Made by a program: the position numbers and the translations under genes
The notes under the pieces: generated by a model
Databases searched by the model: none
Told to the model about the DNA's origin: nothing
Seen by the model: the letters and a program-made list of their open reading frames with translations, nothing else
Shown here: one piece after another, positions 42,175-56,675 of the stretch
Position numbering within the stretch: the first letter of the stretch is position 1
Layout: each line of letters starts with the position of its first letter
Sequence record: NC_023568.1
Length of the DNA: 64,000 nucleotides
Strand: one strand, 5' to 3'

Positions 42175-43611
42175 TTAAAAGCTGTAGCGTTCGACGCCTA
42201 CAGTTTTCATCATGATCTTGATTGGCTCAAGCTCACCACCCAACAGTGAAGTCAAGATAGATGGGCTACAACCAGATACCAGTGCAGTACCCGCTTCACC
42301 AGCTTTAACCGGAACGTTGCCAAGACGACCACGAATGTTCCAGAAGACCAGTTGTGGCATTTCATAACCAGCACGTGCGTACATGGCTTTGATTGCATCG
42401 AAGTTCGCAGGTTCACCGCGACCGTACCAGCCACCGCCAGTGTTTGCTTGATCGAATTCCATGTCACTCATGATAAGCAACTTGGTTGGCATATCTTCTT
42501 GTGAAAGATTTGCACGCTTCGCACGCTCTAGCAGAACATCAAAGCACTTACCGATGTTCGTACTCATGTCTTCGCCTGAACGATTCATGTTATCAAGACG
42601 CTCTTTCAATGAGCTACCGCGCAACTGGTGGAAGTGCGGGTCGCTTGAGAACGAAATGAATTGATCTTTGAAGATGCCTTCATTGCGTTCAGCAACATAA
42701 ATCCCAAGAGACATTGCAACTTGCTTACAAGTCACACCTGAATGGTCTGTACCTGCGTTGATTGGCGTGCTCATAGAGCCAGACACGTCAACAACAGGGA
42801 TGATGCGCTCATCAGAACCTTCCATGTAGTTTGGCAGAGCTTTCCATTGCTCGTTCGCTACAGACGCATTACCGTGACTAACGCTCTTAACGACATCGTA
42901 TGGGAACAATGCGCCAGCGTTGATCTTCGCTTCACCTTTTTGAAGTGACTCGATGTAGCTTGTGTAACGAGCTGAAGCGTTACGACCGAATGCTTGTTGA
43001 TAACGAGCAGACGCTACAGAAGGCAATTTACCGAAGTCGATTGCATCCCATTCCTGAGCACACATTTTCTGTTCAACAGTGTCAGACAGAAGAGAAAGAA
43101 TCTTACGCCACTGCTTCGCAGTTACACCAAGAGACTTGATTGTGCGCTTGAATACGTGACCGTTTTTGCTGTTCTCGCGTGGGAACCACTTCGCAGCAAG
43201 ACCGTTCTTGTCGTTTACAATCGCGTTTGACCACATAGTGATCGCGTCTTTTTCTAGACTTGTGCCGAAAGCAGAAATCAAGTCATCGAAACGACCTAGT
43301 TCTGGAATTTTCGACATTACAGCACGAGCTACGTCAGGCTGCTCATTACAAAGTTTAGCGAAAATAGTACGGAAAGTACCACGTTCACCCGCACCACCGC
43401 GAACGTCACGAGACCATAGCAAGATGCGTGTCGCAAGTTCTGGGTTTTCTGCAAACGCACGACCGAACAGTGTTTTAGACTGATCGTTGCCACGCATAGC
43501 AGCAATACCGAAGAACAAGTTTAGACACTCGTTACCTGAAGTGCTGTGAGTAACTGCACCGTTTACTGTGCGTGAATCGTTTGTTTGCATTGCGTTCATA
43601 AATACTGACAT
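42175..43611 (-). CDS. Ro60-like TROVE/vWA protein (DUF2828 type)
   Basis: RDVRGGAGER, AAKWFPRE helical region; MIDAS VVDVSGSM, MSDMEFD, LVFWN. Confidence 0.8.
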   Translation of the reverse strand: MSVFMNAMQTNDSRTVNGAVTHSTSGNECLNLFFGIAAMRGNDQSKTLFGRAFAENPELATRILLWSRDVRGGAGERGTFRTIFAKLCNEQPDVARAVMSKIPELGRFDDLISAFGTSLEKDAITMWSNAIVNDKNGLAAKWFPRENSKNGHVFKRTIKSLGVTAKQWRKILSLLSDTVEQKMCAQEWDAIDFGKLPSVASARYQQAFGRNASARYTSYIESLQKGEAKINAGALFPYDVVKSVSHGNASVANEQWKALPNYMEGSDERIIPVVDVSGSMSTPINAGTDHSGVTCKQVAMSLGIYVAERNEGIFKDQFISFSSDPHFHQLRGSSLKERLDNMNRSGEDMSTNIGKCFDVLLERAKRANLSQEDMPTKLLIMSDMEFDQANTGGGWYGRGEPANFDAIKAMYARAGYEMPQLVFWNIRGRLGNVPVKAGEAGTALVSGCSPSILTSLLGGELEPIKIMMKTVGVERYSF

Positions 43612-43690
43612 TGTTCATTTCCTCATAATTAATTGCTGTAAAATGTCTTTGATGAAGTGATTATACGCGAATTTTAATGCGTGTAAACAC
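43607..43690 (-). promoter_or_regulatory. early promoter plus leader carrying the AG-N8-CAGCA module that pairs with the start codon
   Basis: GTTTAC-17-TATAAT; GACATT (43642-43647) complementary to AATGTC (43607-43612). Confidence 0.75.
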
Positions 43691-43699
43691 TTTTTTCAA

Positions 43700-44011
43700 T
43701 TATCGATAATTACGACTGATATTCGTACCATTTTTGTATATCTCAACAGATACATAACCACCAGATTCATAGCAAGTGCGTAAATTTCGGTAGCCGTACT
43801 GTTCAAAGAATGCACGAATGAAACCAGAACCTTTCTTATCACAATCACTAATGTGAATTGGTACTTTGATTTTAATCGGGAAAAAAGCCCCGTTTTCAAC
43901 TGCATGTGTGAATTCTTTTTCACACTCGCCATTATAATGTTCGCTAAGAACTTTACGAGCTATTTGCTCTCGTTGATTAATTTGTTTTGAAAGTTCGTCA
44001 TGACTAAGCAT
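43700..44011 (-). CDS. hypothetical protein
   Basis: ORF track; FPI.I.V similarity to the neighbouring gene. Confidence 0.65.
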   Translation of the reverse strand: MLSHDELSKQINQREQIARKVLSEHYNGECEKEFTHAVENGAFFPIKIKVPIHISDCDKKGSGFIRAFFEQYGYRNLRTCYESGGYVSVEIYKNGTNISRNYR

Positions 44012-44346
44012 CATTGAAACCCCGCTTGTTTATTTTCTCGAATTGTCAATTTCACAAAAGAATATGAATAGTCTCTCACATCACGAGGGTCGCCAGAATA
44101 ATGACCGAACTGTGCATCGAAATTGTGAAATCCCTCACGTCGCATGACACTCTTGATGAGAGTCATCATTTCATCACAACATTCATTTCGTTCAAGATTA
44201 ACTTGAATCGTAATCGGGAACTGAAATCCCGAAACACCACCGATCTTACGCTCAATTGATTTACGCATTTCAACGACGAACAATTCTTCGCGTTTTGAAC
44301 GATTCTGCTTGACTCGTTGAGTTAAAATATCATATAGATTGCTCAT
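44011..44346 (-). CDS. hypothetical protein
   Basis: AAGGA RBS; ORF track. Confidence 0.7.
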   Translation of the reverse strand: MSNLYDILTQRVKQNRSKREELFVVEMRKSIERKIGGVSGFQFPITIQVNLERNECCDEMMTLIKSVMRREGFHNFDAQFGHYSGDPRDVRDYSYSFVKLTIRENKQAGFQ

Positions 44347-44708
44347 AGATATTCCTTAATTGGTTTTGAAAAATGTCGAATGCATGAACTATCGAGACGC
44401 AGACGACCATCACCGTCAATATCTGGTAGCGTGTACCCATCATTGAATGGTTGACCGCTTTCTTTCGCGAGTTCATAAGCATCAGCGCGATTGAAGTATT
44501 CACCACAATAATTGATGAATCCCTGCCCACGATCACCAAGTTCGCTTCGATGTTCATATGTACAGCCAAGTTCTTTCAATAGCTTAAACACGCCTTGCAT
44601 GTTTCGACCAAAATGGCAGCTATCTGCAACAACAATATCCCTCTCTTCGCCATTTGGTAAAGTGACTCTAATTGCATTTGCAGCAGCAGAAATTACGTTT
44701 AAGTGCAT
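44343..44708 (-). CDS. conserved phage hypothetical protein
   Basis: QGFI...G.YF.R..AY.LA..SGQ motif. Confidence 0.7.
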   Translation of the reverse strand: MHLNVISAAANAIRVTLPNGEERDIVVADSCHFGRNMQGVFKLLKELGCTYEHRSELGDRGQGFINYCGEYFNRADAYELAKESGQPFNDGYTLPDIDGDGRLRLDSSCIRHFSKPIKEYL

Positions 44709-45046
44709 GTATCTTGCCTCATAAAGATAGAACCCACACGTTTATATTGAAGTGTGTTCATCAACATCATAGTCATCTTAGAGTGAGCAACAGGGTTACT
44801 CGTTACTAGAACAACTGTGCGTGGGAAGTTACGATGATCAATTGCATGAGAGAGAATATCATATCCCTCATGACCAAGAGCACCGCCTAGATCATTGTCC
44901 ATGAATAAAGTAATATCTGTAAGATTCGTATGTTTGACGAATTTCATACCGTCTTCATACGTACGCAAAACAAGCTTCTGATCTGCGGAAATTTCAGGCG
45001 CAGTGAACTTATCGATATCACGCATATCATCAATCATTACAAACAT
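44699..45046 (-). CDS. cyclic-phosphate-processing receiver domain protein
   Basis: IDDMR, FMDNDLG, GYDIL, TSNP motifs. Confidence 0.6.
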   Translation of the reverse strand: MFVMIDDMRDIDKFTAPEISADQKLVLRTYEDGMKFVKHTNLTDITLFMDNDLGGALGHEGYDILSHAIDHRNFPRTVVLVTSNPVAHSKMTMMLMNTLQYKRVGSIFMRQDTCT

Positions 45047-45111
45047 AGTAAATTCTCGTTAGTTATTTCCGATAAATACATGATACAGGTTTAACAACAG
45101 GAAGTCAACAC

Positions 45112-45483
45112 ATGAATGACGAAAAAATAAAATCTTTTGAAGAGTACCTAAACGAAGGTTGGTTTGAAAGACAATGGTCTAGATACAAAGCAGGGGCTGA
45201 CTCGCGCAGCATTAAGAAACTAGCCAAGATGCACACTAAATTGTTGCATATCGAACAGAAAGCCAAGCAAAACAAATATCGATATGAAGCAGTGCGATAT
45301 AATTACGAACACATCAAGATGAACGTGTTAGACGCGAAGAGGCTGATCAATAAGCTACGCTATAAGAAAGGTATTAGTGATGAACTAAGAATGGCAATGG
45401 ACAAGTTAGATGTCGAGCTAGATAGGCTGAATGATTTTGCAGTTGAAGGTTTACATGAGCTAATGATTCAACATAAGCTATAA
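45112..45483 (+). CDS. late protein with capsid-targeting-like N-terminus (internal-protein-like)
   Basis: GATAAATA at 45071; KSFEEYLNE. Confidence 0.6.
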   Translation: MNDEKIKSFEEYLNEGWFERQWSRYKAGADSRSIKKLAKMHTKLLHIEQKAKQNKYRYEAVRYNYEHIKMNVLDAKRLINKLRYKKGISDELRMAMDKLDVELDRLNDFAVEGLHELMIQHKL

Positions 45484-45487
45484 AAAT

Positions 45488-45513
45488 AAAAGCCCCAATT
45501 AAGGGGCTTTTTT
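45488..45513. terminator. terminator between convergent genes
   Basis: AGCCCC aattaa GGGGCT + T run. Confidence 0.85.
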
Positions 45514-45514
45514 G

Positions 45515-45727
45515 TTAGTGTGAATGGCGTAACTTTTTTTCGATCATTCGATCTACAATCGTGGAGTACATAAGATGTTCTTTATAATATTTCTCATCAA
45601 CTCGGTTACATTGAAAGTCTCGAAAATCTTTGCGCAGACGTGCAATAAATTTATTAAGCGTTTTGCGTACTTTGCAAACTTCAGACAATTCCATGCTTTT
45701 TAGTGTTTCTTCAGAAAGTATTTCCAT
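45515..45727 (-). CDS. hypothetical protein
   Basis: GAGGTG RBS. Confidence 0.7.
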   Translation of the reverse strand: MEILSEETLKSMELSEVCKVRKTLNKFIARLRKDFRDFQCNRVDEKYYKEHLMYSTIVDRMIEKKLRHSH

Positions 45728-45755
45728 GATTGCTCACCTCTTAGTTAATAGAATA

Positions 45756-45801
45756 CGGGAGACACAGGAATCGAACCTATTGCCTTGACCACATATCTCC
45801 C
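45756..45801 (-). ncRNA. anticodon-less mini-tRNA
   Basis: GGGAGAT/GTCTCCC acceptor, TGT-GGTCAAG-GCA D-like arm, ATAGG-TTCGATT-CCTGT T arm; no encoded CCA. Confidence 0.7.
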
Positions 45802-45825
45802 ACTGAGAAGTTACGCCAATTCAGA

Positions 45826-46053
45826 TTAATGCGCTATGCTTTGTAAACGGCGCATACGCTCACGCTGCGATAACTCATCGAGATTGGGTTTATCAATCTC
45901 TTCGTCTTTCTCTGCGGCTTCTGCTTCCTTTTTAATCTTTTCAGCATTGGGACCAATGTTCTTCCAAAGAGGTGCGTTGCGCCAATTTTCATTATGCCCG
46001 TTACCCGAACCACGCCCTTCACGAGCATGAGACTTTTGGTGAATGTTCTTCAT
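45826..46053 (-). CDS. hypothetical charged protein
   Basis: TAATG coupling to upstream gene. Confidence 0.65.
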   Translation of the reverse strand: MKNIHQKSHAREGRGSGNGHNENWRNAPLWKNIGPNAEKIKKEAEAAEKDEEIDKPNLDELSQRERMRRLQSIAH

Positions 46054-46259
46054 TATTCGTTAGATTTCTTTGTTACTTGAGTTGCAAGACCTACCGCAGC
46101 AGCACCAGCGGCTACTTTAGCGCCTGTTTTCGCAGCTTTACCCGCTTTCTTTGCACCAGACTTGACACGATCTTTTACTGAACGTTTCTTTTTCTTTTTA
46201 TCTTCTGGCTGTTGTTCTTGTAGTTCAGACATGAACTTATCGAATGTTTTATCACTCAT
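46053..46259 (-). CDS. basic Lys/Ala-rich internal-protein-like peptide
   Basis: KTFDKFMSE N-terminus; CTAAATA upstream; GGAG RBS. Confidence 0.6.
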   Translation of the reverse strand: MSDKTFDKFMSELQEQQPEDKKKKKRSVKDRVKSGAKKAGKAAKTGAKVAAGAAAVGLATQVTKKSNE

Positions 46260-46364
46260 GACATTTCTCCAATTGATTTGAGTTCATCTGTATTTAGAAG
46301 ATATTTCACATCATTCACTCTATGATGATAAATACGTAAAGTAAACAATAAAAGAGAATCGACA

Positions 46365-46703
46365 ATGGCATTCACTAAGATCGAACTCCCTGCAAAGAGA
46401 AGCAGAAGAAGCATTTATATACCTGCGGGTCAGTACTATGCAGATCTAGACATGACACATCCACAGCAGCGTGATGGGAATTATTTTTCAGTTCTTGCAA
46501 CGTTTGGGGATGTGCAGATTGCATTCGGCGGGAGGTGGTATGACAAGAAAAACCCACAAGACCCCGATGACCCATTGCCTTTATTCCCAGAAGATTTCAT
46601 TTTAGTTTCGTATAATGGACATTATGAAGCACAAGGCAATTTATTCAACACGAGCACTAGAATTTGGTTTAGTTCGATTTCTGGTTGCACACTACTATAT
46701 TAA
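46365..46703 (+). CDS. late hypothetical protein
   Basis: GATAAATA at 46327; GAG RBS. Confidence 0.7.
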   Translation: MAFTKIELPAKRSRRSIYIPAGQYYADLDMTHPQQRDGNYFSVLATFGDVQIAFGGRWYDKKNPQDPDDPLPLFPEDFILVSYNGHYEAQGNLFNTSTRIWFSSISGCTLLY

Positions 46704-46712
46704 GGACACAAA

Positions 46713-48503: not shown

Positions 48504-48748
48504 AGACATTCGAGAAGTGTTTTATCGTCTTTCCTTAAATCTCATTTGACTATAACGATGTTTCTCATCGGAAAAATACTCATGATTCGGCATGAGTCCT
48601 ATTTCGTTTGACAGTACGAACACCGTCTTAATGGTCATTTCCTACCACGAGAATGCGACAGGCTCACGTCATCACTGAGAAAGCAGCTAGTGCGCCTCAT
48701 TACTATTAAAGTTTGCTTTGATTTTGTAATGATTGCTGTACAATGTCT
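48504..48748 (-). ncRNA. 245-nt structured RNA closed by the AG-N8-CAGCA module (Y-RNA-like, long type)
   Basis: AGACATT/AATGTCT terminal helix, about six internal hairpins, 3' motif shared with 50505-50733. Confidence 0.75.
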
Positions 48749-48848: not shown

Positions 48849-48887
48849 AACGTCTCATCAATTAATGGCATGCTGCTCTCATGCTCA

Positions 48888-48921
48888 GACACATATTTGC
48901 TCTTATTGCTGACGTGTGCCA
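48888..48921 (-). ncRNA. minimal copy of the helix-CAGCA module
   Basis: TGGCACA-CGT-CAGCAAT...TGTGTC. Confidence 0.5.
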
Positions 48922-50500: not shown

Positions 50501-50504
50501 GTAC

Positions 50505-50733
50505 AGACAATACCGAAGTGTTTTTTTCGTCTTTTGCATAAATCGGAGTTGACTAGCTTATTGATTCTCAACAAGCAAATATCGTCTGTTTCAGCGACGC
50601 GCCTATCTGACTATTTCTAGACAGAGAGAATCTTTCCTTTCAAGCTGCGCCTAAGCAAGCTCAGGTTAAAATCAGCCCAGGTTAAGATCATCACTTCTTT
50701 TAAGTAATTTCAATTGTTTGCTGTATATTGTCT
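50505..50733 (-). ncRNA. 229-nt structured RNA closed by the AG-N8-CAGCA module (Y-RNA-like, long type)
   Basis: AGACAATA/TATTGTCT terminal helix; AAAGACGA...AAAACACTTC 3' motif. Confidence 0.75.
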
Positions 50734-50796
50734 CTCTCACCATGCTCGTGATATGCCGAAGCAAAGTATCATTCGTCGCATGATAAGAGCTTAATA

Positions 50797-50872: not shown

Positions 50873-50946
50873 ATTGAAAAGATTCGAACCATGAACTAGT
50901 GTAGACGATGGTAGTAAAGAGAGTCTACGCTCATGTGTTCGAAATT

Positions 50947-51021
50947 TGGTGGACACGCAGGGAGTCGAACCCTATCTTCCTCATTGCAAGTGAGGCGCTT
51001 TCCCAATTAAGCTAACGGCCC
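50947..51021 (-). tRNA. tRNA-Ala(TGC), irregular acceptor stem
   Basis: loop CTTGCAA, G3.U70 present, lower acceptor mispaired or bulged. Confidence 0.8.
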
Positions 51022-51028
51022 ATATTTT

Positions 51029-51238: not shown

Positions 51239-51262
51239 GTTATTCTCGCAGTTGTTTGAAAA

Positions 51263-51338
51263 TGGTGCCCTGACACGGATTCGAACCGCGAACCTGCTCA
51301 TTACAAGTGAGCTGCACTGCCAGTTGTGCTATCAGGGC
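51263..51338 (-). tRNA. tRNA-Thr(TGT)
   Basis: loop CTTGTAA, CCA. Confidence 0.93.
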
Positions 51339-51344
51339 GTTACT

Positions 51345-51457
51345 GAGTGTTATTACTAGCGTCGTCCAGACCAGTGATACCAACACTGAAAGGGAATCGA
51401 ACCCTAAACATTTCTTTCCGATAAGAATATTAGTAAATTGTTTGCTGAAAACACTCT
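51345..51457 (-). ncRNA. YrlA-like circularly permuted tRNA mimic with the module
   Basis: GAGTGTT/AACACTC end helix; order T arm (TTCGATT), capped acceptor-like stem, GG-containing D-like loop. Confidence 0.75.
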
Positions 51458-51465
51458 TCGGTATT

Positions 51466-51539
51466 TGGCTGGGGATAACAGATTCGAACTGATACCAACG
51501 CATTCAAAGTACGTTATGCTGCCTTTACACCAATCCCCA
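51466..51539 (-). tRNA. tRNA-Gln(TTG)
   Basis: U1-A72, loop CTTTGAA, CCA. Confidence 0.93.
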
Positions 51540-51558
51540 ATTGTTCTTAAATTATCTT

Positions 51559-51634
51559 TGGCGGAACCGACGGGTTTCGAACCCGCTACCTTCTCCGTGA
51601 CAGGGAGACATGCAACCACTTACACCTCGGCTCC
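51559..51634 (-). tRNA. tRNA-Asp(GTC)
   Basis: loop CTGTCAC, G73, CCA. Confidence 0.93.
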
Positions 51635-51704
51635 CCAAAGACAACTTAAAGTAGTTGCTTTGTTTTTTTCAAGTTCACACTTAACGGTAGTGACTCTCCG
51701 AATT

Positions 51705-51780
51705 TGGCGGACCGCCCGAGACTCGAACTCGGAACTCCTCGCTTAACAGGCGAGCACTCTAACCATTGAGTTAGCGATCC
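51705..51780 (-). tRNA. tRNA-Asn(GTT)
   Basis: loop CTGTTAA, G73, CCA. Confidence 0.93.
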
Positions 51781-51792
51781 TAAAATTTAAAC

Positions 51793-51850
51793 AGTAATCC
51801 TTTTTGCTTTTTCCAAATAAAAGTTTTGTATTGTTTGCTGTAAGATTACT
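51793..51850 (-). ncRNA. 58-nt end-closed RNA with the module
   Basis: AGTAATC/GATTACT helix then TTA-CAGCAAA. Confidence 0.7.
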
Positions 51851-51855
51851 TAAAC

Positions 51856-51929
51856 TGGCAGGGGCATAGAGATTCGAACTCTAACGAACGGGTTTGGAAT
51901 CCGTCATGCTGCCTTTACATCATGCCCCT
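51856..51929 (-). tRNA. tRNA-Trp(CCA)
   Basis: loop TTCCAAA, CCA. Confidence 0.92.
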
Positions 51930-51935
51930 AAAATT

Positions 51936-52009
51936 TGGTAGTCCCTAAGAGAATCGAACTCTTACCAAGCGATTATCGGTCGCACGCTCTACCGTTGAGC
52001 TAAGGGACT
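51936..52009 (-). tRNA. tRNA-Ile(GAT)
   Basis: loop CCGATAA (C33), CCA. Confidence 0.88.
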
Positions 52010-52072
52010 AAAGTGTGCGCATTTCAGCGCACTGTTAATCGGTTAAGTGACTAAACTTCCCGGTTAACTAAT

Positions 52073-52171
52073 TGGCGGAAGACTAGGGATTCGAACCCTA
52101 ACATCACCTCCCGGTGACCGACGGTTTTCAAGACCGTTGCCGCTACCCAGAATCTTTCGGCTAAGCCTTCC
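52073..52171 (-). tRNA. tRNA-Ser(TGA), enlarged D-loop
   Basis: loop CTTGAAA, long variable arm, 15-nt D-loop, CCA. Confidence 0.85.
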
Positions 52172-52178
52172 ATTAATT

Positions 52179-52255
52179 TGGTTGCGTGGGGCTGGATTCG
52201 AACCAGCGTTCTCCGGCTTATGAGACCGACGAGATGACCACTTCTCTACCCCGCA
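52179..52255 (-). tRNA. initiator-like tRNA-Met(CAT) with bulged acceptor stem
   Basis: resembles fMet tRNA (GCGGGG...CTCATAA...GCAACCA); one extra A in 3' strand. Confidence 0.8.
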
Positions 52256-52265
52256 ATTATTCAAC

Positions 52266-52352
52266 AGCTTGCGTTCTTTGGTCTGTTTATCGCTGTCTGA
52301 ACTGAGTTCGTCGAGCGATCAATAGAGTAAGTTAAATTGCAGTATGCAAGCT
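52266..52352 (-). ncRNA. 87-nt end-closed RNA with the module
   Basis: AGCTTGC/GCAAGCT helix then ATA-CTGCAAT; internal ATCGCT/AGCGAT stem. Confidence 0.72.
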
Positions 52353-52357
52353 AAAAC

Positions 52358-52443
52358 TGGTGGAGCGTAGAGGAATCGAACCTCTCTACCCGTTAAGGGT
52401 CAGGGATTTACAGTCCCCTGTCTCACCTTGAGACGTACGCTCC
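52358..52443 (-). tRNA. tRNA-Tyr(GTA)
   Basis: loop CTGTAAA, long variable arm, CCA. Confidence 0.93.
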
Positions 52444-52449
52444 AGAATA

Positions 52450-52524
52450 TGGTTCTCCCGACGAGATTCGAACTCGCGCACTTCACCTTGAAAGGGTGAT
52501 GACCTACCGTTAGTCCACGGGAGA
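52450..52524 (-). tRNA. tRNA-Glu(TTC)
   Basis: loop CTTTCAA, CCA. Confidence 0.92.
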
Positions 52525-52587
52525 ATTAAATTGTATATTGATTTGCAAGCTATCTAACTTGCAAAGCGATACACAATGTATCTAATT

Positions 52588-52664
52588 TGGTACGCCGCTC
52601 TGGACTCGAACCAGACACCTGAGAGTTAAAAGCTCCCTGCTCTTCCATGATGAGCTACCGACGC
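52588..52664 (-). tRNA. tRNA-Lys(TTT) copy 1
   Basis: loop CTTTTAA, CCA. Confidence 0.88.
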
Positions 52665-52675
52665 ATTATAAAATC

Positions 52676-52749
52676 TGGTGGGTCCACAGAGATTCGAACT
52701 CTGACTGAAGGATTAAAAGTCCCATATGCTACCATTACATCATAGACCC
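52676..52749 (-). tRNA. tRNA-Lys(TTT) copy 2 (different body)
   Basis: loop CTTTTAA, CCA. Confidence 0.88.
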
Positions 52750-52837
52750 AATTTGATTTTCACGTTAAGAGCGTTTGCTAAATAACTCAAAACTAAAACC
52801 CCTTGCTTGATTTAACTCTTACAAACAAGCTATAATA

Positions 52838-52912
52838 TGGTGCACCCCCTCGGAATCGAACCGAGCACTGCGGGACTTCAATCCGCCGCTTTTCCTGATA
52901 AGCTAAGGGTGC
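52838..52912 (-). tRNA. tRNA-Phe(GAA)
   Basis: loop TTGAAGT, CCA. Confidence 0.88.
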
Positions 52913-52913
52913 T

Positions 52914-52990
52914 TGGTACGCAAGAAGAGATTCGAACTCTTAACTTCTGGTTTCTAAGACCAGTGCCTCTGCCAATTGGGCTACTTGCGC
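52914..52990 (-). tRNA. tRNA-Leu(TAG)
   Basis: loop CTTAGAA, CCA. Confidence 0.92.
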
Positions 52991-53009
52991 ATTAAATTTT
53001 GTAAACTTC

Positions 53010-53138
53010 TTTTCTTCATTGTACATGATGTTTATATCGTTGTAAACATCTTTTTTGAAAAACTTTTCATTCGATTTTGAATGATAATTCGCTTTTCTTC
53101 ATTGTACATGATGTTTATATCGTTGTAAACATCTTTTT
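53010..53138 (-). promoter_or_regulatory. tandem identical 46-bp promoters for tRNA genes
   Basis: 53010-53055 = 53093-53138; TTTACA-17-TACAAT with internal GATGTTTA/TAAACATC inverted repeat. Confidence 0.8.
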
Positions 53139-53344
53139 GATTTTTTTTTTGAAGAACTTAACGTTTTCATTTTCTATGTGTTAATATTAACACTCGCTCA
53201 AGACATCATAAACACTAATTCATGAAAAGTTCGTTAAATTCTATCATCTCGACAGTACTTAACGAGATACGGTCCTAAGCGTATCAATTCGTAGAAGCAG
53301 TTTCGGGAATGTGCGAAAGCGAGCTTCAATCAAACAACACTAAC

Positions 53345-53420
53345 TGGCACCCAATACAAGATTCGAACTTGTAACCTTCGCCTTCGTAGGGCGCTGCTCT
53401 TCCAATTGAGCTAATCGGGC
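53345..53420 (-). tRNA. tRNA-Arg(ACG)
   Basis: loop CTACGAA, CCA. Confidence 0.92.
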
Positions 53421-53427
53421 ATTAAAC

Positions 53428-53504
53428 TGGTCCGTGACAAGCGATTCGAACGCTTAACTTCTCCGCCCCAAACGGAGTACTCTACCAGATTGAGCTAGTC
53501 ACGG
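53428..53504 (-). tRNA. tRNA-Pro(TGG) copy 1
   Basis: C1-G72, loop TTTGGGG, CCA. Confidence 0.92.
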
Positions 53505-53513
53505 ATTTTAAAT

Positions 53514-53587
53514 TGGTCGGGACGAAGAGACTCGAACTCTTACCACATGCTCCCAAAGCATGAACGCTACCTTTACGCCACGTCCCG
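53514..53587 (-). tRNA. tRNA-Pro(TGG) copy 2
   Basis: C1-G72, loop TTTGGGA, CCA. Confidence 0.92.
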
Positions 53588-53664
53588 TTTGTTCTTTAAC
53601 TTTGTTTATCATACTCTGTAATCAAAGTACGTTAAACAAAATTTCTTAACTTTCTTACGCCCAT

Positions 53665-53688
53665 AAAAAAGGACGCTATTTGCGTCCT
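53665..53688 (-). terminator. rho-independent terminator
   Basis: GGACGC aaata GCGTCC + T6 on - strand. Confidence 0.8.
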
Positions 53689-53717
53689 CAAGTATACTTC
53701 TATGTTATACTATCGGA

Positions 53718-53831
53718 CTACAAGAGGGTATCCCACTTCTGGTTCGCAATCGGATTCGCTAGATACACGAATTCTGAGCGCAGAAAATCGCTGCGTAATG
53801 TCTCAGATGAATGTGTAAACGAATGCGTCAT
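53718..53831 (-). CDS. 37-aa small ORF, absent from the ORF track
   Basis: AAGAGAG RBS; MTHSFTHSSETLRSDF...WDTLL; own terminator downstream. Confidence 0.45.
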   Translation of the reverse strand: MTHSFTHSSETLRSDFLRSEFVYLANPIANQKWDTLL

Positions 53832-53958
53832 TGAATGCTCTCTTGAAATAAAAATTAAAATTTGTTTTGTTTCTTTATAGTACTTATAACACTAAATCTG
53901 ACGATTTGCGGTATTTTCGCAGAAAATTGAAAAAAATTATCAATTTTCTGCGATTTTA

Positions 53959-54195
53959 TTAACCTAAGTGTTTTCGCTTGTTCATTTCAGCAAGAATTTC
54001 GTCGTTGTAGTGCTTATTAAGCTCAACGAATTTCTTGTGCTGATCTGAAGTCAATTCGTTTGTATCGTTCAGATGCTTCAAAAACCCAAGAGGCTTACGA
54101 AACGACTTGCGATATTCATTCAGACGCTCATCTGTTAGATTGCGCAATTGTTTCGGAGTCAGTAACGTTTTGTTGATATTAAATGTTCCGCTCAT
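53959..54195 (-). CDS. hypothetical protein
   Basis: GAGGT RBS before ATG 54195. Confidence 0.7.
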   Translation of the reverse strand: MSGTFNINKTLLTPKQLRNLTDERLNEYRKSFRKPLGFLKHLNDTNELTSDQHKKFVELNKHYNDEILAEMNKRKHLG

Positions 54196-54221
54196 GTTAT
54201 ACCTCACTAGTTTATCAAAAA

Positions 54222-54337
54222 TGGTAGTCGGGGCTGGATTCGAACCAGCGACCACGTGCTTAACAGGCAATTGAAGGAGTGCTGGAGCGATACTTGTCAG
54301 TATCATTCTTCGTGCTCTACCACTGAGCTACCCGACT
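54222..54337 (-). ncRNA. tRNA body (Asn-like loop retained) with the module inserted in the anticodon arm
   Basis: AGTCGGG/CCCGACT, D and T arms, ACCA; insert GATACT-GACA-AGTATC-GCTC-CAGCA. Confidence 0.8.
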
Positions 54338-54342
54338 ATGAA

Positions 54343-54864
54343 TTATTTAACTTTGAATTTCAAATTTCGATATTCAAAGTTTCGTTTGTCTTTTTTACTG
54401 TAATACGTATCCCAATCAATAGAAACAGGACAGTTCTTACTACCCACACGAGATAAGAAAACGTCGTGAGTGTCTTTGTAAGCTTCTCTGAGAGACTTTA
54501 CTTGTTTCTCATGATGAGTTATGTACTCAGCACACGCTTTGTTGTACTCAGCTTTAGAGAAGCGGTCATCGCCCGTGAAATTACCGTTTAGATACGGTCG
54601 AATAACACGAACACGCTCTTTAGACCATCCCATACTAAAACTATTTTCAATTCGACCGATGATTTCACCAGTCTTTTTACATCGTGCAAGAATAACCCAG
54701 CAACGCTCTCTTCGAAAGTCTTTTCGAGTGAATACATTGATGTACTTATCAACATACTCTTGATAGCGTTCGTTATATATTTTACGAAGTCTGCTACGTT
54801 CTTCAATCGTCATAGCAGCACGTTCTTCTTTAGAGAACGCCTCAACGAACTTCAATGGTTTCAT
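54343..54864 (-). CDS. hypothetical protein
   Basis: GAGG RBS before ATG 54864. Confidence 0.7.
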   Translation of the reverse strand: MKPLKFVEAFSKEERAAMTIEERSRLRKIYNERYQEYVDKYINVFTRKDFRRERCWVILARCKKTGEIIGRIENSFSMGWSKERVRVIRPYLNGNFTGDDRFSKAEYNKACAEYITHHEKQVKSLREAYKDTHDVFLSRVGSKNCPVSIDWDTYYSKKDKRNFEYRNLKFKVK

Positions 54865-54877
54865 TATAATTTCCTCT

Positions 54878-54974
54878 TGGCGCCGCTCGTGTGAATCGAA
54901 CACACGTCAAACACAACACCTCTTCAACCCAATTAGAGTTTCGAAGTAAGAGCTAATCAGCATTTCAGAGCAGC
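54878..54974 (-). ncRNA. tRNA-like RNA with CCA and non-canonical D/anticodon region
   Basis: GCTGCTC/GAGCGGC acceptor, GTGTG-TTCGATT-CACAC T arm, GCCA end. Confidence 0.65.
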
Positions 54975-55121
54975 CGAGCGTTATTTCTACATACAAGACT
55001 TCGACATCTCACATGCACTTTCTACTCGGTCCCAGTGATTCGGTACCAACGTAGGTTGCGAACCTACGTCTGCACTAATGTTGGGAATACACTGTGTATT
55101 GTACGCCAGTTAGCGGCATTT

Positions 55122-55352
55122 TTAAAGATAGCTGTCAAAAACATCATCACTGACTTCTTCAATCTTGATGTCAGCGTAACATTCGTTCGCAACTGCTCGA
55201 ATTTCATCTATTGAAACTGTACCCGAGTACAAAACAACAGAGTCGTTCGGAATCACAACATCACACATGTATCTGTCAAACATTTCAGTTCTGAAATCGT
55301 AATCGACGTAGCAAGCGTGCATTGATGTGATAACTAGCAATTTATGTGACAT
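55122..55352 (-). CDS. hypothetical early protein
   Basis: TTGACA-17-TAGTAT promoter at about 55383-55411; GAGG RBS. Confidence 0.7.
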   Translation of the reverse strand: MSHKLLVITSMHACYVDYDFRTEMFDRYMCDVVIPNDSVVLYSGTVSIDEIRAVANECYADIKIEEVSDDVFDSYL

Positions 55353-55431
55353 AATGTTTTCCTCGTGTAGTTGATAATGTGTATACTACACGTTGATGAA
55401 ACGTCTGTCAACAACTTTTTTCAATTTATTT

Positions 55432-55509
55432 TGGTGACCCCAACAGGACTCGAACCTGTAACCTACCGATTATGAGTCGGTTGCTCTAACCGTGTTGAGC
55501 TATAGGGCC
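55432..55509 (-). tRNA. tRNA with CAT anticodon (Ile2- or Met-like)
   Basis: GGCCCTA acceptor, loop CTCATAA, CCA. Confidence 0.88.
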
Positions 55510-55510
55510 A

Positions 55511-55879
55511 TCATTTCTCTAGAAATCGACCAACTTTCGCAGCGAAGATGTTTGCTTCTTCTGTAATACGAGCAGTCGATTTAATTTGATGAAATGCGTC
55601 TTGTTGATGCAGCAAATCGAGCTTATCTGCACATTTCATCAATTCTTTTATAGTTTGCATAATCTCAATATTATCAATCTGACTTGTATCAGGGTGATAA
55701 TTTAGATTGTCTAATATCGGCAGAACTTGTTGATAGCAACCCATGCCAATGAAGTTTATCATAAGTCTATACTGCATTTCAACAGCAAATGTACAATATT
55801 TTCGAAGATTGCGCTTTACAATCTCACAACGATGCAATATACAATCAAGTTCGTCATTTATGTCATTAAACTTATTCAT
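55511..55879 (-). CDS. hypothetical protein
   Basis: GAGGG RBS before ATG 55879. Confidence 0.7.
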   Translation of the reverse strand: MNKFNDINDELDCILHRCEIVKRNLRKYCTFAVEMQYRLMINFIGMGCYQQVLPILDNLNYHPDTSQIDNIEIMQTIKELMKCADKLDLLHQQDAFHQIKSTARITEEANIFAAKVGRFLEK

Positions 55880-55893
55880 AAACCCTCGAAAAT

Positions 55894-56017
55894 TGGTGGA
55901 GAGTACGGGATTTGAACCACGTGACAAAAAGATTTACCTAGTTATTAAGGTTGCAGCATGAATGCTTGTCAGTATTCTTTAACATTCTTTTGCTCTACCA
56001 GACTGAGCTAACTCTCC
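55894..56017 (-). ncRNA. tRNA body with the module replacing the anticodon loop
   Basis: GGAGAGT/ACTCTCC, ACCA; GAATACT-GACA-AGCATTC-ATG-CTGCAA. Confidence 0.8.
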
Positions 56018-56024
56018 AGAATTT

Positions 56025-56140
56025 GAAGGTGAAGTGCAGGACTCGAACCTGCGACCTCCGGCGTGCATGTGAATGCAGAATGAAATCTTATCAGACTTCG
56101 TTTTTTGGCCGGCGTTCTAACCTACTGAACTAACTTCACC
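56025..56140 (-). ncRNA. Asp-like tRNA body with the module replacing the anticodon loop
   Basis: GGTGAAGT/ACTTCACC, CCGGC/GCCGG stem; GAAGTCT-GATA-AGATTTC-ATT-CTGCA; no CCA. Confidence 0.78.
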
Positions 56141-56150
56141 AATGTAAAAA

Positions 56151-56287
56151 CATATTGAGCAGGGTGCAGGATTCGAACCTGCGTCACGATCTTGGAAATG
56201 ATATGCTAAATTGATTGCAGAATACAAACTTAACAGCTTGCGTTTATGCTACGTGTGCTAGCCACTACACCAACCCTGCTCAATATG
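56151..56287 (-). ncRNA. Gly-like tRNA body with the module, inside a 15-bp terminal stem
   Basis: GCAAGCT-GTTA-AGTTTGT-ATT-CTGCAA; residual TTTCCAA; T arm GCAGG-TTCGAAT-CCTGC. Confidence 0.78.
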
Positions 56288-56330
56288 TTCTTGAGAGTGC
56301 TTGTGATTAACCACAAGCACCAAAAATCCT

Positions 56331-56519
56331 CTAGTTATATTTGCCTTAGCTAATCAAAACACAATCTGGAATCGTGCGCTTTAATTACGGGATGAATGAC
56401 CCGTTCGCATGTGATTAGCGCAAAAGTATGAATGCGCACCTTTTCTTCTTCAATGTCCAAGGCAAAAAGGACGATGAATACTAGTGCGAGAAGATATACA
56501 ATCAAATTGTCCACCTCGC
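56331..56519 (-). ncRNA. multi-helix structured RNA
   Basis: TTTGCCTT/AAGGCAAA, CTAATCA/TGATTAG, ACGGG/CCCGT, GCGAG/CTCGC pairings. Confidence 0.5.
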
Positions 56520-56528
56520 TTTGTTAGT

Positions 56529-56675
56529 GAGAGTACATTGGTCGAGTGTAACGGAATCGAACCGTTCCCACGATCTCCCTATGATATGCGTAAATTGGTT
56601 GCTGAATATAATCATGTCTGATTACAGTATGCTACGTGTGCTGCCACTACACCAACACTCGACCAATGTACTCTC
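56529..56675 (-). ncRNA. tRNA body with the module, inside a 21-bp terminal stem
   Basis: CGAGTGT/ACACTCG + ACCA; TGTAATCA-GACA-TGATTAT-ATT-CAGCAA; paralogue of 56151-56287. Confidence 0.8.

What the first reader, a model, noticed from the sequence alone, without database searches (positions are those of the whole stretch)
42175..56675. Candidate phage Ro60/Y-RNA-like system: one protein and twelve RNAs sharing a covarying helix + CWGCA module
Seen on the - strand, 5' helix strand - 3 nt - motif (coordinate of first base): AGACATT-TTA-CAGCA (43648), AGACATT-GTA-CAGCA (48748), TGGCACA-CGT-CAGCA (48921), AGACAAT-ATA-CAGCA (50733), AGAGTGT-TTT-CAGCA (51457), AGTAATC-TTA-CAGCA (51850), AGCTTGC-ATA-CTGCA (52352), AGTATCG-CTC-CAGCA (54294), AGCATTC-ATG-CTGCA (55966), AGATTTC-ATT-CTGCA (56088), AGTTTGT-ATT-CTGCA (56230), TGATTAT-ATT-CAGCA (56614). 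Spacing is invariant, the helix sequence varies but always has a complementary partner, and the G-C at position 2 is kept. The module occurs in two circularly permuted topologies: closing RNA ends, or capped by a tetraloop inside a tRNA. Established: Ro60/TROVE-vWA proteins bind a terminal helix of Y RNAs, some of which mimic tRNA, and cluster with RNA-repair genes. Inference: the DUF2828-type protein binds this module and is loaded with a panel of interchangeable RNAs (tRNA decoys, scaffolds), for example to counter anticodon nucleases or to direct RNA repair or decay. The motif differs from the classical bulged-C Y-RNA site. I cannot check whether it is already catalogued.
Basis: partly seen in the sequence, partly recalled or inferred. 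Interest (0 to 1): 0.93.

Follow-up and report, generated by a model that had tools for sequence, protein, structure and literature searches.

The report
Phage Ro60-like protein and partner RNAs
A marine Vibrio phage encodes a distant relative of the Ro60 RNA-binding protein together with at least thirteen small RNAs carrying one shared docking module; this gene-plus-RNA pair recurs next to each other in very different phages, and the module looks like that of the "Class I" RNAs so far thought unique to social amoebae.

Summary
The window is Vibrio phage VH7D, a relative of KVP40 and T4. All 12 sites exist as written. The module is a 6-7 bp helix starting (A)AG and ending CU-G(U), then 3 nt, then CNGCA(A). 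It occurs 13 times on the minus strand of 42.1-56.9 kb, against about 0.4 in shuffles and none in the other 42 kb.

The 478-aa DUF2828/DUF7788 protein folds like Ro60 (TROVE ring plus vWA); its six best PDB matches are all Ro60.

The association holds elsewhere. In 78 uncultivated viral contigs with a homolog (48-55% identity), 51 carry a 53-68 nt RNA with this module within 100 nt downstream of the gene. The same pairing appears in Felixounavirus, Campylobacter, Listeria, Staphylococcus, Enterococcus and mycobacteriophages. No other neighbour is conserved. T4, which has no detected homolog, lacks the module.

The module sits on three bodies: minimal RNAs, YrlA-like permuted tRNA domains, and tRNAs whose anticodon arm it replaces. 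One copy covers the gene's own ribosome-binding site.

Nothing in Rfam reaches threshold. The only family matched is Dictyostelium Class I RNA, below threshold, and every sequence feature tested agrees. A preprint reports that the Bas63 ortholog counters the ppl defence.

Protein-RNA binding is inferred, not shown. This is a new variant of the Ro60/Y-RNA kind.

The parts
42175..43611 (-). Gene for the 478-aa DUF2828/DUF7788 protein, a Ro60-like TROVE ring plus vWA domain with a MIDAS motif
   Evidence: Pfam DUF7788 6.7e-46 and DUF2828 1.5e-28. AF2 model pLDDT 74.2. Foldseek top six hits are all Ro60. D275-V-S277-G-S279 is invariant in 32 homologs.
43606..43648 (-). Module copy in the 5' leader of the Ro60-like gene. 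Helix GACAUU/AAUGUC, then UUA-CAGCAA. The loop holds the Shine-Dalgarno GAGGA and the 3' strand holds the AUG. Candidate translational operator.
   Evidence: It starts about 12 nt after a GTTTACA-N17-TATAAT promoter. The helix is in the MFE fold. Conserved in phi-ST2, KVP40 and F86. Comparable leader copies occur in L081, L088 and CP81. CM R1 E 0.15.
48504..48748 (-). Terminal-type RNA of about 245 nt, last element of the tRNA operon before the terminator. AGACAUU-GUA-CAGCAA ... AAUGUCU-GU.
   Evidence: Perfect 7-bp partner. Conserved in KVP40 (247 nt), D480 (191 nt) and F86 (192 nt).
48887..48921 (-). Weak candidate copy of 35 nt: UGGCACA-CGU-CAGCAA ... UGUGUCU.
   Evidence: G.U-containing helix. 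Present in phi-ST2 and KVP40 only. Least secure member.
50505..50733 (-). Terminal-type RNA of about 229 nt: AGACAAU-AUA-CAGCAAACAAU ... AUUGUCU-GU.
   Evidence: Perfect 7-bp helix. F86 has the compensatory pair AGGCAAU/AUUGCCU.
51344..51457 (-). Terminal-type RNA of about 114 nt enclosing a T-arm and a D-arm-like hairpin, a reduced YrlA-like permuted tRNA domain.
   Evidence: Sequence read and fold. CM R1 E 0.011. Fuller counterparts occur in TP1 L008:8397, Whirlwind L091:4044 and phiM7.
51793..51850 (-). Minimal 58-nt RNA: AGUAAUC-UUA-CAGCAAACAAU ... GAUUACU-GU.
   Evidence: Rfam Dicty_Class_I_RNA 31.8 bits, E 7.5e-5 over 101 nt. KVP40 has the compensatory pair AGCAAUC/GAUUGCU. MFE z-score -2.2.
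52266..52352 (-). Terminal-type RNA of 87 nt: AGCUUGC-AUA-CUGCAA ... GCAAGCU-GU.
   Evidence: Perfect 7-bp helix. Present in phi-ST2 and KVP40. The helix is in the MFE fold.
54225..54337 (-). tRNA-shaped RNA with the module in place of the anticodon arm (hairpin UGAUACU-GACA-AGUAUCG, then CUC-CAGCA). It retains a latent CUGUUAA (Asn) loop.
   Evidence: Rfam tRNA 49.8 bits with a 54-nt insert. Annotated tRNA-Pseudo-3 in KVP40. Orthologs aligned.
55897..56017 (-). tRNA-shaped RNA with the module in the anticodon arm: GAAUACU-GACA-AGCAUUC, then AUG-CUGCAA.
   Evidence: Rfam tRNA 50.2 bits with a 48-nt insert. The helix covaries in D480, 1.081.O and F86.
56028..56139 (-). tRNA-shaped RNA with the module in the anticodon arm: GAAGUCU-GAUA-AGAUUUC, then AUU-CUGCA.
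   Evidence: Rfam tRNA 56.3 bits with a 44-nt insert. MFE z-score -3.3 with the module hairpin formed.
56150..56288 (-). tRNA-like RNA with a 15-17 bp acceptor stem and the module in the anticodon arm: GCAAGCU-GUUA-AGUUUGU, then AUU-CUGCAAUCAAUUU.
   Evidence: MFE z-score -5.2. nt-1 and KVP40 have a completely exchanged helix, GAUUCU/AGAAUC, and the motif CGGCAA.
56529..56675 (-). tRNA-like RNA with a 21-bp acceptor stem and the module in the anticodon arm: GUAAUCA-GACA-UGAUUAU, then AUU-CAGCAACCAAUUU.
   Evidence: Sequence. Orthologs carry GCAAGUU/AGCUUGU and GCUUACU/AGUAAGU in the same place.
56687..56748 (-). 62 nt: UGUGCGU-UAG-CCGCAA ... GCGCACA.
   Evidence: MFE z-score -2.9, terminal helix formed. 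Also present in phi-ST2.

Best explanation
This is a phage version of the Ro60/Y-RNA ribonucleoprotein, built from a divergent branch of the protein family and a different RNA docking site.

Shown by computation:
- The 478-aa DUF2828/DUF7788 protein has the Ro60 architecture: a helical-repeat ring plus a vWA domain with an intact MIDAS motif.
- The phage encodes at least 13 RNAs on the same strand that share one module. The module is a 6-7 bp helix whose outer end reads 5'-(A)AG...CU-G(U)-3'. On the 5' strand it is followed by 3 nt and the single-stranded motif CNGCAA.
- The helix covaries, while the motif and the end nucleotides are conserved.
- The gene and at least one such RNA lie side by side in phages of proteobacteria, Campylobacter, Firmicutes and actinobacteria. 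No other neighbouring gene is conserved.

Inferred:
- The protein recognises the module, meaning the helix end plus the single-stranded CNGCAA. It is thereby loaded with a panel of RNAs that differ in their body.
- The bodies are of three kinds: a minimal A/U-rich loop (about 55-60 nt); a permuted tRNA-like domain as in bacterial YrlA; or a whole tRNA, with normal or elongated acceptor ends, whose anticodon arm is replaced by the module closed with a GNNA loop.
- The last two are the same three-dimensional design with the chain break at opposite ends. In both, the module sits where a tRNA has its anticodon arm.
- The tRNA-shaped bodies would then act as handles that bring the protein to tRNA-binding partners, or bring those partners to the protein. 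This parallels the way Y RNA tethers bacterial and phage phiLo Ro60 to PNPase.
- The copy in the gene's own leader, whose helix and loop contain the Shine-Dalgarno sequence and the AUG, would let free protein repress its own translation.

The biological output is most likely protection of the infection against a host defence or RNA damage. The ortholog in coliphage Bas63 is reported to be needed against the ppl defence. The target and chemistry are unknown.
For: Protein:
- Pfam DUF2828 and DUF7788.
- The Foldseek top six hits are all Ro60 structures aligned over 506-568 columns, E 6e-8 to 3.5e-5.
- The MIDAS motif DVSGSM is invariant.
- UniRef names several eukaryotic homologs 'TROVE domain-containing protein'.

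The module is real in the window:
- 13 copies against about 0.4 in shuffles, one strand only.

Covariation:
- Six of seven helix pairs show double substitutions in 17 short RNAs.
- Orthologous copies in KVP40-like phages show exchanged helices.

Co-occurrence:
- In 78 IMG/VR loci, AG-N5-WWW-CAGCAA occurs 35 times on the gene strand and once on the other.
- 51 of 78 loci have a module within 100 nt downstream of the stop codon. 63 of 78 have one within 700 nt downstream or 300 nt upstream. About 0.5 would be expected in the 100-nt windows from the opposite-strand rate.
- The covariance model adds further loci.
- Other lineages: TP1 and Bas63 have four copies just after the gene; CP81, LP-125 (three tandem copies) and Whirlwind (three tandem copies then a terminator); Staphylococcus and Enterococcus phages.
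- Only 33 of 84 loci have any tRNA within 10 kb, and no other VH7D neighbour is shared.
- T4's syntenic tRNA region has no module.

Y-RNA likeness:
- The tRNA-like cores match Rfam YrlA positions 24-84 in Whirlwind (38 bits) and phiM7 (35 bits), flanked by a terminal stem that carries CAGCA.

Leader copies:
- VH7D, phi-ST2, KVP40, F86, L081, L088 and CP81.

Function:
- Bas63 gp130 counters ppl (PMC11482910). It is 97.5% identical to TP1 gp129 and has the four modules downstream.
- Phage phiLo Ro60 binds two adjacent Y-like RNAs and host PNPase (PMC12135203).
Against: - No binding, expression or processing data exist for any of these RNAs. Adjacency and co-transcription do not prove a physical complex.
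- Pfam's TROVE model does not hit the protein at E <= 0.01.
- The model is of moderate confidence (pLDDT 74, TM to Ro60 0.46-0.61).
- The classical Ro60-binding stem is absent, so recognition cannot be transferred from known structures.
- The IMG/VR loci are related to each other, so the counts overstate the number of independent events.
- The rule set and alignment A2 were built from sequences chosen for having a partner, so 100% pairing there is by construction.
- In VH7D most copies lie 5-13 kb from the gene, inside a tRNA operon, where a processing signal is a natural alternative.
- The Dictyostelium RNAs with the same design are reported to bind an RRM protein, Rnp1A, not a TROVE protein (PMC7919456).
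Confidence: 0.65

Rival explanations
1. The module is a cis-acting processing or stability signal, recognised by a host or phage ribonuclease, that punctuates polycistronic tRNA and mRNA transcripts. Its adjacency to the DUF2828 gene would reflect co-transcription only.
For: In VH7D, TP1 and phiM7 many copies begin 3-12 nt after a tRNA 3' end. The conserved flanks AAG and CUG(U) could be cleavage sites. A DUF458 RNase H-like gene lies directly downstream of the protein gene in KVP40-like phages.
Against: The module is adjacent to the gene in 51 loci that mostly have no tRNA within 10 kb, and the DUF458 gene is not found in any other lineage. T4's tRNA operon lacks the module. A processing signal does not explain copies capped by a tetraloop inside tRNA bodies, or the enclosed tRNA-like domains. 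The two ideas are not exclusive, since the protein could itself mark processing sites.
Confidence: 0.15
2. The copies inside tRNAs are intron-like or mobile insertions that are removed to give working tRNAs. The free-standing copies are excised or degenerate relatives.
For: Removing 41 nt from 54225-54337 restores a perfect CGUGC-CUGUUAA-GCACG (Asn GUU) anticodon stem-loop. Element 55897-56017 reads AAAGA-AUGUUAA followed by 46 nt and UCUUU. Both inserts begin AAGAAU, and the latent loops are conserved in orthologs. tRNAscan and ARAGORN call these genes intron-containing.
Against: The other three embedded elements give no U33-containing 7-nt loop on any excision (reading). ARAGORN's anticodon calls are mutually inconsistent. 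I saw no bulge-helix-bulge motif, and the inserts are far too short for group I introns. No orthologs without the insert were seen in seven related phages. An ordinary tRNA-Asn(GUU) already exists at 51705-51780. The idea also does not explain the gene association.
Confidence: 0.07
3. The pattern is chance, or it is a promoter or terminator element seen at the DNA level.
For: CWGCA alone is common (326 copies). A 7-mer finds a G.U-tolerant partner within 300 nt at about 40% of random CWGCA sites.
Against: The shuffle test. The strand specificity of 35 to 1. Compensatory substitutions. Recurrence in unrelated phage lineages. There is no U-run after the helix. The enclosed segments of 20-230 nt are incompatible with a promoter.
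Confidence: 0.02

Closest known systems
Ro60 (Rsr) with Y RNA / YrlA in bacteria and phages (Deinococcus, Salmonella, mycobacteriophages, Thermus phage phiLo; Rfam RF02553)
   Same: A ring-plus-vWA protein is encoded next to one or several small RNAs. The RNA's 5' and 3' ends form a stem. Several RNAs carry a permuted tRNA-like domain (T arm, closed acceptor-like hairpin, D arm). The genomic context includes tRNA and RNA-repair genes: RtcB near the Listeria phage copy, and an RNA ligase and Pnk in mycobacteriophage LeBron.
   Different: The protein belongs to Pfam DUF2828/DUF7788, not TROVE, and shares 12-16% identity with solved Ro60s. The stem is short (6-7 bp in most copies) and lacks the Y-RNA bulged helix. 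The conserved element is the single-stranded CNGCAA plus the AAG/CUGU ends. Rfam YrlA matches only the tRNA-like core, below threshold. A further topology exists in which a true-ended tRNA carries the module as its anticodon arm.
Dictyostelid Class I RNAs (Rfam RF01414; Kjellin et al. 2021, PMC7919456)
   Same: RNAs of 42-65 nt. [quoted passage not shown] A conserved 11-nt unpaired motif follows the 5' strand directly; the Rfam consensus is CCUUACAGCAA. The conserved start is AAG, the conserved end is CUGU, and the interior is variable and A/U-rich. The phage consensus is (A)AG-N5-UUA-CAGCAA...N5-CU-G(U).
   Different: The best phage score is 31.8 bits against a gathering score of 41.5. Class I RNAs are nuclear genes with a DUSE promoter, are described as unique to Dictyostelia, and are reported to bind the RRM protein Rnp1A. 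I could not establish whether dictyostelids encode a DUF2828 protein. Common descent, transfer and convergence all remain open.
Bas63 (JohannRWettstein) gp130, reported as a counter of the ppl defence (PhageMaP preprint, PMC11482910)
   Same: It is the ortholog of the VH7D protein: 97.5% identical to TP1 gp129, which is 46% identical to VH7D. It sits directly upstream of a tRNA array. The authors noted its structural similarity to Ro60 and guessed that some annotated tRNAs might be Y RNAs.
   Different: The preprint names no RNA or motif. Here the candidate partners are identified as four non-tRNA elements between the tRNAs, at L215:2052, 2219, 2674 and 2761. Two of them overlap small reverse-strand ORFs in the annotation. 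VH7D additionally has the tRNA-embedded form.
T4 stable RNAs rnaC and rnaD at the end of the tRNA cluster
   Same: The genomic position is the same: the distal end of the tRNA operon, between gene 1/57B and the e region. Both are stable non-tRNA species of unknown role.
   Different: They have no CNGCAA module and no matching helix, and I found no DUF2828 gene in the T4 stretch examined. They are therefore not members.

Membership tests
Ro60 / TROVE-vWA proteins | Helical-repeat ring followed by a vWA domain, over the full length | tested here: met
   The Foldseek top six PDB hits are Ro60 from phage phiLo, Deinococcus, Xenopus and human. They align over 506-568 columns, with TM 0.46-0.61 and E 6e-8 to 3.5e-5. 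The model is of moderate confidence, pLDDT 74.2.
Ro60 / TROVE-vWA proteins | MIDAS motif (D-x-S-x-S) in the vWA domain | tested here: met
   D275, V276, S277, G278, S279 and M280 are invariant in 32 homologs.
Ro60 / TROVE-vWA proteins | Match to the Pfam TROVE model | tested here: not met
   Only DUF7788 and DUF2828 are reported at E <= 0.01. Some eukaryotic homologs are nevertheless named TROVE by UniRef. This is a sister family, not an ortholog.
Ro60 / TROVE-vWA proteins | Binds Y-type RNA | not testable with these tools
   Needs RIP, CLIP or EMSA.
Y RNA / YrlA (RF02553) | Encoded next to the Ro60-type gene | tested here: met
   51 of 78 loci have a copy within 100 nt downstream. Copies are adjacent in TP1, Bas63, CP81, LP-125, Whirlwind, Staphylococcus and Enterococcus phages. 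In VH7D one copy lies in the leader and twelve lie 5-13 kb upstream on the same strand.
Y RNA / YrlA (RF02553) | tRNA-like domain (T arm, closed acceptor-like hairpin, D arm) inside a stem formed by the two ends | tested here: met
   Met in full for TP1 L008:8397, Whirlwind L091:4044 and phiM7. Reduced in window 51344-51457 (T arm plus D-like hairpin). Not a feature of the minimal RNAs.
Y RNA / YrlA (RF02553) | Rfam gathering score (69 bits), including the Ro60-binding stem | tested here: not met
   The best scores are 32-38 bits and cover model positions 23-85 only. The stem part does not match.
Dictyostelid Class I RNA (RF01414) | Short stem joining the 5' and 3' ends, with structure conserved and sequence free | tested here: met
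   7 pairs, 6 of them with double substitutions and G-C at position 2 invariant. Orthologous compensations are shown.
Dictyostelid Class I RNA (RF01414) | Conserved roughly 11-nt unpaired motif directly 3' of the 5' stem strand | tested here: met
   The phage motif WUW-CAGCAA compares with the Rfam consensus CCUUACAGCAA.
Dictyostelid Class I RNA (RF01414) | Conserved start AAG and end CUGU | tested here: inconclusive
   The DNA flanks read (A)AG and CU-G(U/G). The real RNA ends are unknown.
Dictyostelid Class I RNA (RF01414) | Rfam gathering score (41.5 bits) | tested here: not met
   31.8 bits for window 51792-51849 and 24 bits for TP1 7923-7976. None of 16 loci scanned passes.
Dictyostelid Class I RNA (RF01414) | DUSE promoter and dictyostelid nuclear gene | tested here: not met
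   These are phage genes inside bacterial-type operons, so they are at most an analogous or distantly related class.
tRNA (RF00005), for the five embedded elements | Cloverleaf with a 7-nt anticodon loop | tested here: not met
   The acceptor, D and T arms score 49.8-56.3 bits for three of them, but 44-54 nt replace the anticodon loop. KVP40 annotates them as pseudo-tRNAs.
tRNA introns (bulge-helix-bulge or group I) | Excision restores a canonical anticodon stem-loop; a splice motif is present | tested here: inconclusive
   A stem-loop is restored in 2 of 5 elements (reading). I saw no bulge-helix-bulge motif, and the inserts are too short for group I introns.

The most novel reading that the evidence does not exclude
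The phage RNAs and the Class I RNAs of dictyostelid amoebae are one RNA class, defined by the AAG-stem/UUACAGCAA/CUGU module. This class would be the cognate ligand of the DUF2828 branch of the TROVE/Ro60 superfamily, which also occurs in plants, fungi and giant viruses of amoebae. Class I RNAs would then not be a dictyostelid invention. They would gain a predicted protein partner and a predicted Ro60-like role. The large DUF2828 family (8,394 clusters at 50% identity) would gain a defined RNA cofactor.
Probability: 0.3. Interest if true: 0.92.

Novelty: new variant of a known kind. Interest (0 to 1): 0.82.

Why it matters
- Ro60/Y-RNA particles are known from animals, some bacteria and a few phages. 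Their RNA recognition has been studied on a single kind of stem.
- This is a much larger sister family. It has 8,394 clusters at 50% identity and homologs in 711 of 50,697 phage records. It also occurs in plants and fungi. Until now it was a "domain of unknown function" with no known ligand.
- The module gives that family a concrete and easily mutated candidate RNA partner.
- It explains the "pseudo-tRNAs" and several spurious small ORFs in phage annotations.
- It shows a modular design in which one docking element is grafted onto minimal, permuted-tRNA and true-tRNA bodies.
- An ortholog in a laboratory coliphage already has a phenotype against the ppl defence. The role of the RNAs in counter-defence can therefore be tested directly.
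- The match to Dictyostelium Class I RNAs bears on a 20-year-old open question, namely what those abundant RNAs bind and do. It also challenges the claim that they are unique to social amoebae.

Tried and rejected
(1) CWGCA counted alone is only mildly enriched and uninformative.

(2) "Always has a complementary partner" is weak if G.U pairs are allowed over 300 nt. About 40% of random CWGCA sites pass. I tightened the rules before testing.

(3) Rfam at gathering thresholds gives only tRNAs. The YrlA hits in the window that span the T arm of one pseudo-tRNA and the D arm of the next are an artefact of tandem tRNA-like genes.

(4) Promoter, terminator, K-turn, bulge-helix-bulge and ribozyme readings were considered from the sequence and dropped. 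There is no GA tandem after the 3-nt spacer, no U-run and no ribozyme family hit.

(5) I considered pairing of CWGC with the T-stem 5' strand. It fits 3 of the 5 embedded elements and not the others, so I treated it as coincidence.

(6) I scanned IMG/VR for AAG-N6-TTACAGCAAAYWAW. Only the two matches lying near a DUF2828 gene combined such a gene with a helix partner; one has the perfect helix and CU-GU end (L145), the other a partner that ends differently (L157). This weakly supports specificity and is not a census.

(7) I looked for a Dictyostelium DUF2828 protein. The profile search returns only phage-sized proteins. A tripled-length query and a Mortierella query surfaced fungal, plant and insect homologs but no dictyostelid among those listed. 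The result is inconclusive.

(8) The paper on Class I RNA-binding proteins (Avesson 2011) and the KVP40 genome paper are not held in the library.

(9) I looked for a conserved protein neighbour other than tRNAs and found none.

Full report
**What the window is.** The region is 100% identical to Vibrio phage VH7D positions 104000-119000. VH7D is a KVP40-like T4 relative (Schizotequatrovirus). On the minus strand it carries a large tRNA operon. ARAGORN finds 27 tRNAs. Rfam finds 29 tRNA matches, three of which are 112-121 nt long because 44-54 nt replace the anticodon loop. The layout is syntenic with the T4 tRNA region: gene 1 dNMP kinase, 57B, the tRNAs, then rnaD and rnaC.

**The observation.** All twelve strings are at the stated coordinates. 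CWGCA by itself means little, and a G.U-tolerant 7-mer partner within 300 nt is found at roughly 40% of random sites. The composite pattern is highly non-random.
- AG-N8-CWGCAA occurs 11 times on the minus strand and once on the plus strand. CWGCAANCAAT occurs 5 times against 1.
- Under stricter rules the minus strand of 42.1-56.9 kb has 5 hairpin-type and 8 terminal-type modules. 500 dinucleotide shuffles gave means of 0.03 and 0.33. There are none in the other 42 kb.
- Four terminal copies have perfect 7-bp Watson-Crick partners (52352, 51850, 50733, 48748) and two have 6 bp (51457, 43648).
- Five copies are closed by a GNNA-type tetraloop inside tRNA-shaped genes.
- Site 48921 is weak.
- A 13th copy lies at 56687-56748.
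- The refined consensus is (A)AG-N5 / 3 nt (mostly WUW) / CNGCAA ... N5-CU / G(U). Orthologs show that the second motif base is free.

**The RNAs are under selection for structure.** Among KVP40-like phages the helices change by compensatory substitutions while the motif stays fixed.
- Element 56529-56675 has GUAAUCA/UGAUUAU in VH7D, GCAAGUU/AGCUUGU in F86 and GCUUACU/AGUAAGU in D480.
- Element 56150-56288 has an entirely different helix, GAUUCU/AGAAUC, in nt-1 and KVP40.
- 51850 has U-A changed to C-G in KVP40, and 50733 has A-U changed to G-C in F86.
- Minimum-free-energy folds contain the predicted helix in every element tested.

**The protein.** ORF 42175-43611 (478 aa) matches Pfam DUF7788 and DUF2828. 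An AlphaFold model built on 32 homologs has pLDDT 74. Its six best PDB matches are Ro60 of Thermus phage phiLo, Deinococcus Rsr, and Xenopus and human Ro60, all aligned over the full length. The vWA MIDAS residues are invariant. The family is very large: 7,383 hits at 90% clustering, 8,394 clusters at 50%, and 711 of 50,697 phage records. It also occurs in fungi, plants and some insects. There UniRef sometimes names it TROVE, or "L728" after the mimivirus protein. It is best described as a sister family of Ro60 rather than an ortholog, because the Pfam TROVE model itself does not hit.

**The association test.** I fetched 78 uncultivated viral contigs that encode a homolog at 48-55% identity.
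- AG-N5-WWW-CAGCAA occurs 35 times on the gene strand and once on the other.
- 51 loci have a complete module within 100 nt downstream of the stop codon, and 63 have one within 700 nt downstream or 300 nt upstream. The opposite-strand rate predicts about 0.5 for the 100-nt windows.
- These RNAs are 53-68 nt long and their helices covary between syntenic copies: AGGUUCC/GGAACCU, UGGUUCC/GGAACCA, AGAUUCC/GGAAUCU, AGGAUAG/CUAUCCU and AGAAUGA/UCAUUCU.
- A covariance model built from 17 of them recovers further copies in loci the rule set had missed.

The same pairing is found in isolate genomes from very different hosts:
- Felixounavirus TP1 and Bas63: four copies just after the gene, among the first tRNAs.
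- Aeromonas phage Aeh1: tRNA-embedded copies 2.7 kb downstream.
- Campylobacter CP81: a copy directly before the ribosome-binding site.
- Listeria LP-125: three tandem copies before the gene, with RtcB downstream.
- Mycobacteriophage Whirlwind: three tandem copies after the gene, then a terminator.
- Staphylococcus and Enterococcus phages.

No other VH7D neighbour is shared, and only 33 of 84 loci have any tRNA within 10 kb, so tRNA arrays do not explain the link. The syntenic T4 region has no module. The loci are not phylogenetically independent, and my rules were derived from the data. The breadth of lineages is the real argument.

**Three bodies, one module.**
- (a) Minimal RNAs of about 55-60 nt with an A/U-rich interior.
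- (b) RNAs whose interior is a permuted tRNA-like domain: T arm, closed acceptor-like hairpin, D arm. Rfam YrlA matches exactly this core (model positions 24-84, 35-38 bits) in Whirlwind and phiM7. The flanking terminal stem carries CAGCA instead of the YrlA stem. TP1 8397 and, in reduced form, window 51344-51457 belong here.
- (c) tRNA-shaped RNAs with open acceptor ends. Two have 15-21 bp acceptor stems. In these the module replaces the anticodon arm and is closed by CU-GNNA-AG.

The capped loop CUG-NN-AAG is what results from joining the conserved 3' end CUG(U) to the conserved 5' start (A)AG.

**Leader copy.** In VH7D, phi-ST2, KVP40 and F86 a copy starts about 12 nt after a sigma-70-type promoter. 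It encloses the Shine-Dalgarno sequence in its loop and the AUG in its 3' strand. L081, L088 and CP81 have a copy immediately before the ribosome-binding site. This suggests feedback control of translation but is untested.

**Comparison with known families.**
- Phage Ro60/Y-RNA pairs are known in mycobacteriophages, CcrColossus, phage G and phiLo (PMC4201824, PMC12135203). The earlier survey searched only genomes annotated with a TROVE protein, which would exclude DUF2828 phages.
- A 2024 preprint found that Bas63 gp130 resembles Ro60, lies upstream of tRNAs and is needed against the ppl defence. It guessed that some tRNAs might be Y RNAs. I confirmed that gp130 is the ortholog and located four module RNAs between, not among, the tRNAs.
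- The LeBron homolog is moderately toxic when overexpressed.
- In the searchable literature I found no description of the module.
- The only Rfam family the minimal RNAs touch is Dictyostelium Class I RNA: 31.8 bits against a gathering score of 41.5, E 7.5e-5 on 101 nt and 0.004 on 5.2 kb. The published defining features agree point by point with the phage consensus: a 6-bp terminal stem with compensatory changes, an invariant 5' G, an 11-nt unpaired motif after the 5' strand, start AAG, end CUGU and a variable interior. Those RNAs are described as unique to Dictyostelia and as binding an RRM protein.
- I could not determine whether dictyostelids have a DUF2828 protein. Homology, transfer (giant viruses of amoebae carry DUF2828) and convergence all remain open.

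**Verdict.** Binding and function remain inferred. I rate it a new variant of a known kind, of high interest because it assigns an RNA ligand to a very large family of unknown function. It is immediately testable in laboratory phage-host pairs, and it makes an unexpected connection to amoebal Class I RNAs.

Noticed in passing
window 54884-55118 (-): A conserved non-coding RNA of about 240 nt between two small ORFs. It has a tRNA-like acceptor stem (GCCGCU/AGCGGC, then GCCA) and a T arm (GUGUG-UUCGAUU-CACAC). Both stems covary across seven KVP40-like phages; for example the T stems are GGGAG/CUCCC in nt-1 and AGAGG/CCUCU in 1.081.O. It has no Rfam or ARAGORN tmRNA hit and no CNGCAA module.
   Followed up: partly
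window 54225-54337 and 55897-56017 (-): Two module-bearing pseudo-tRNAs keep a latent Asn (GUU) anticodon loop. Removing 41 nt, or about 46 nt, would restore a canonical anticodon stem-loop. Both inserts begin AAGAAU. This could be an intron-like history or an alternative fold.
   Followed up: partly
L090:971-1522 (Listeria phage LP-125): A ROOL RNA-like element (87.4 bits, gathering score 99.1, E 1.4e-16) lies between tRNA genes about 1 kb upstream of the DUF2828 gene, with an RtcB ligase gene 1.3 kb downstream.
   Followed up: no
window 57258-57713 (-) and 41601-42131 (-): An Acb1 (anti-CBASS 2H phosphoesterase) homolog sits at the T4 57B position beside the dNMP kinase gene. A DUF458 RNase H-like gene lies directly downstream of the Ro60-like gene. 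The latter is confined to KVP40-like phages.
   Followed up: partly
L215:2728-3002, L089:2361-2498, L093:4019-4272, and many small CDS in L213/L214: Small 'hypothetical protein' ORFs in the public records of Bas63, CP81, Staphylococcus phage S-CoN_Ph10, D480 and F86 overlap module RNAs or tRNAs. They are probably annotation artefacts.
   Followed up: partly
window 50950-51021 (-): Rfam detects a tRNA here (44.9 bits) that ARAGORN does not call. phi-ST2 annotates the ortholog as a pseudo tRNA-OTHER.
   Followed up: no
window ~53020-53150 (-): A tandem duplication of about 60 nt carries a sigma-70-type early promoter (GTTTACA-N17-TACAAT) upstream of the tRNA-Leu/Phe block (read).
   Followed up: no
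L213:1960-2550 (phage D480): A homing endonuclease gene is inserted on the opposite strand immediately upstream of the Ro60-like gene. The rule-based scan found no leader module copy in this phage.
   Followed up: no
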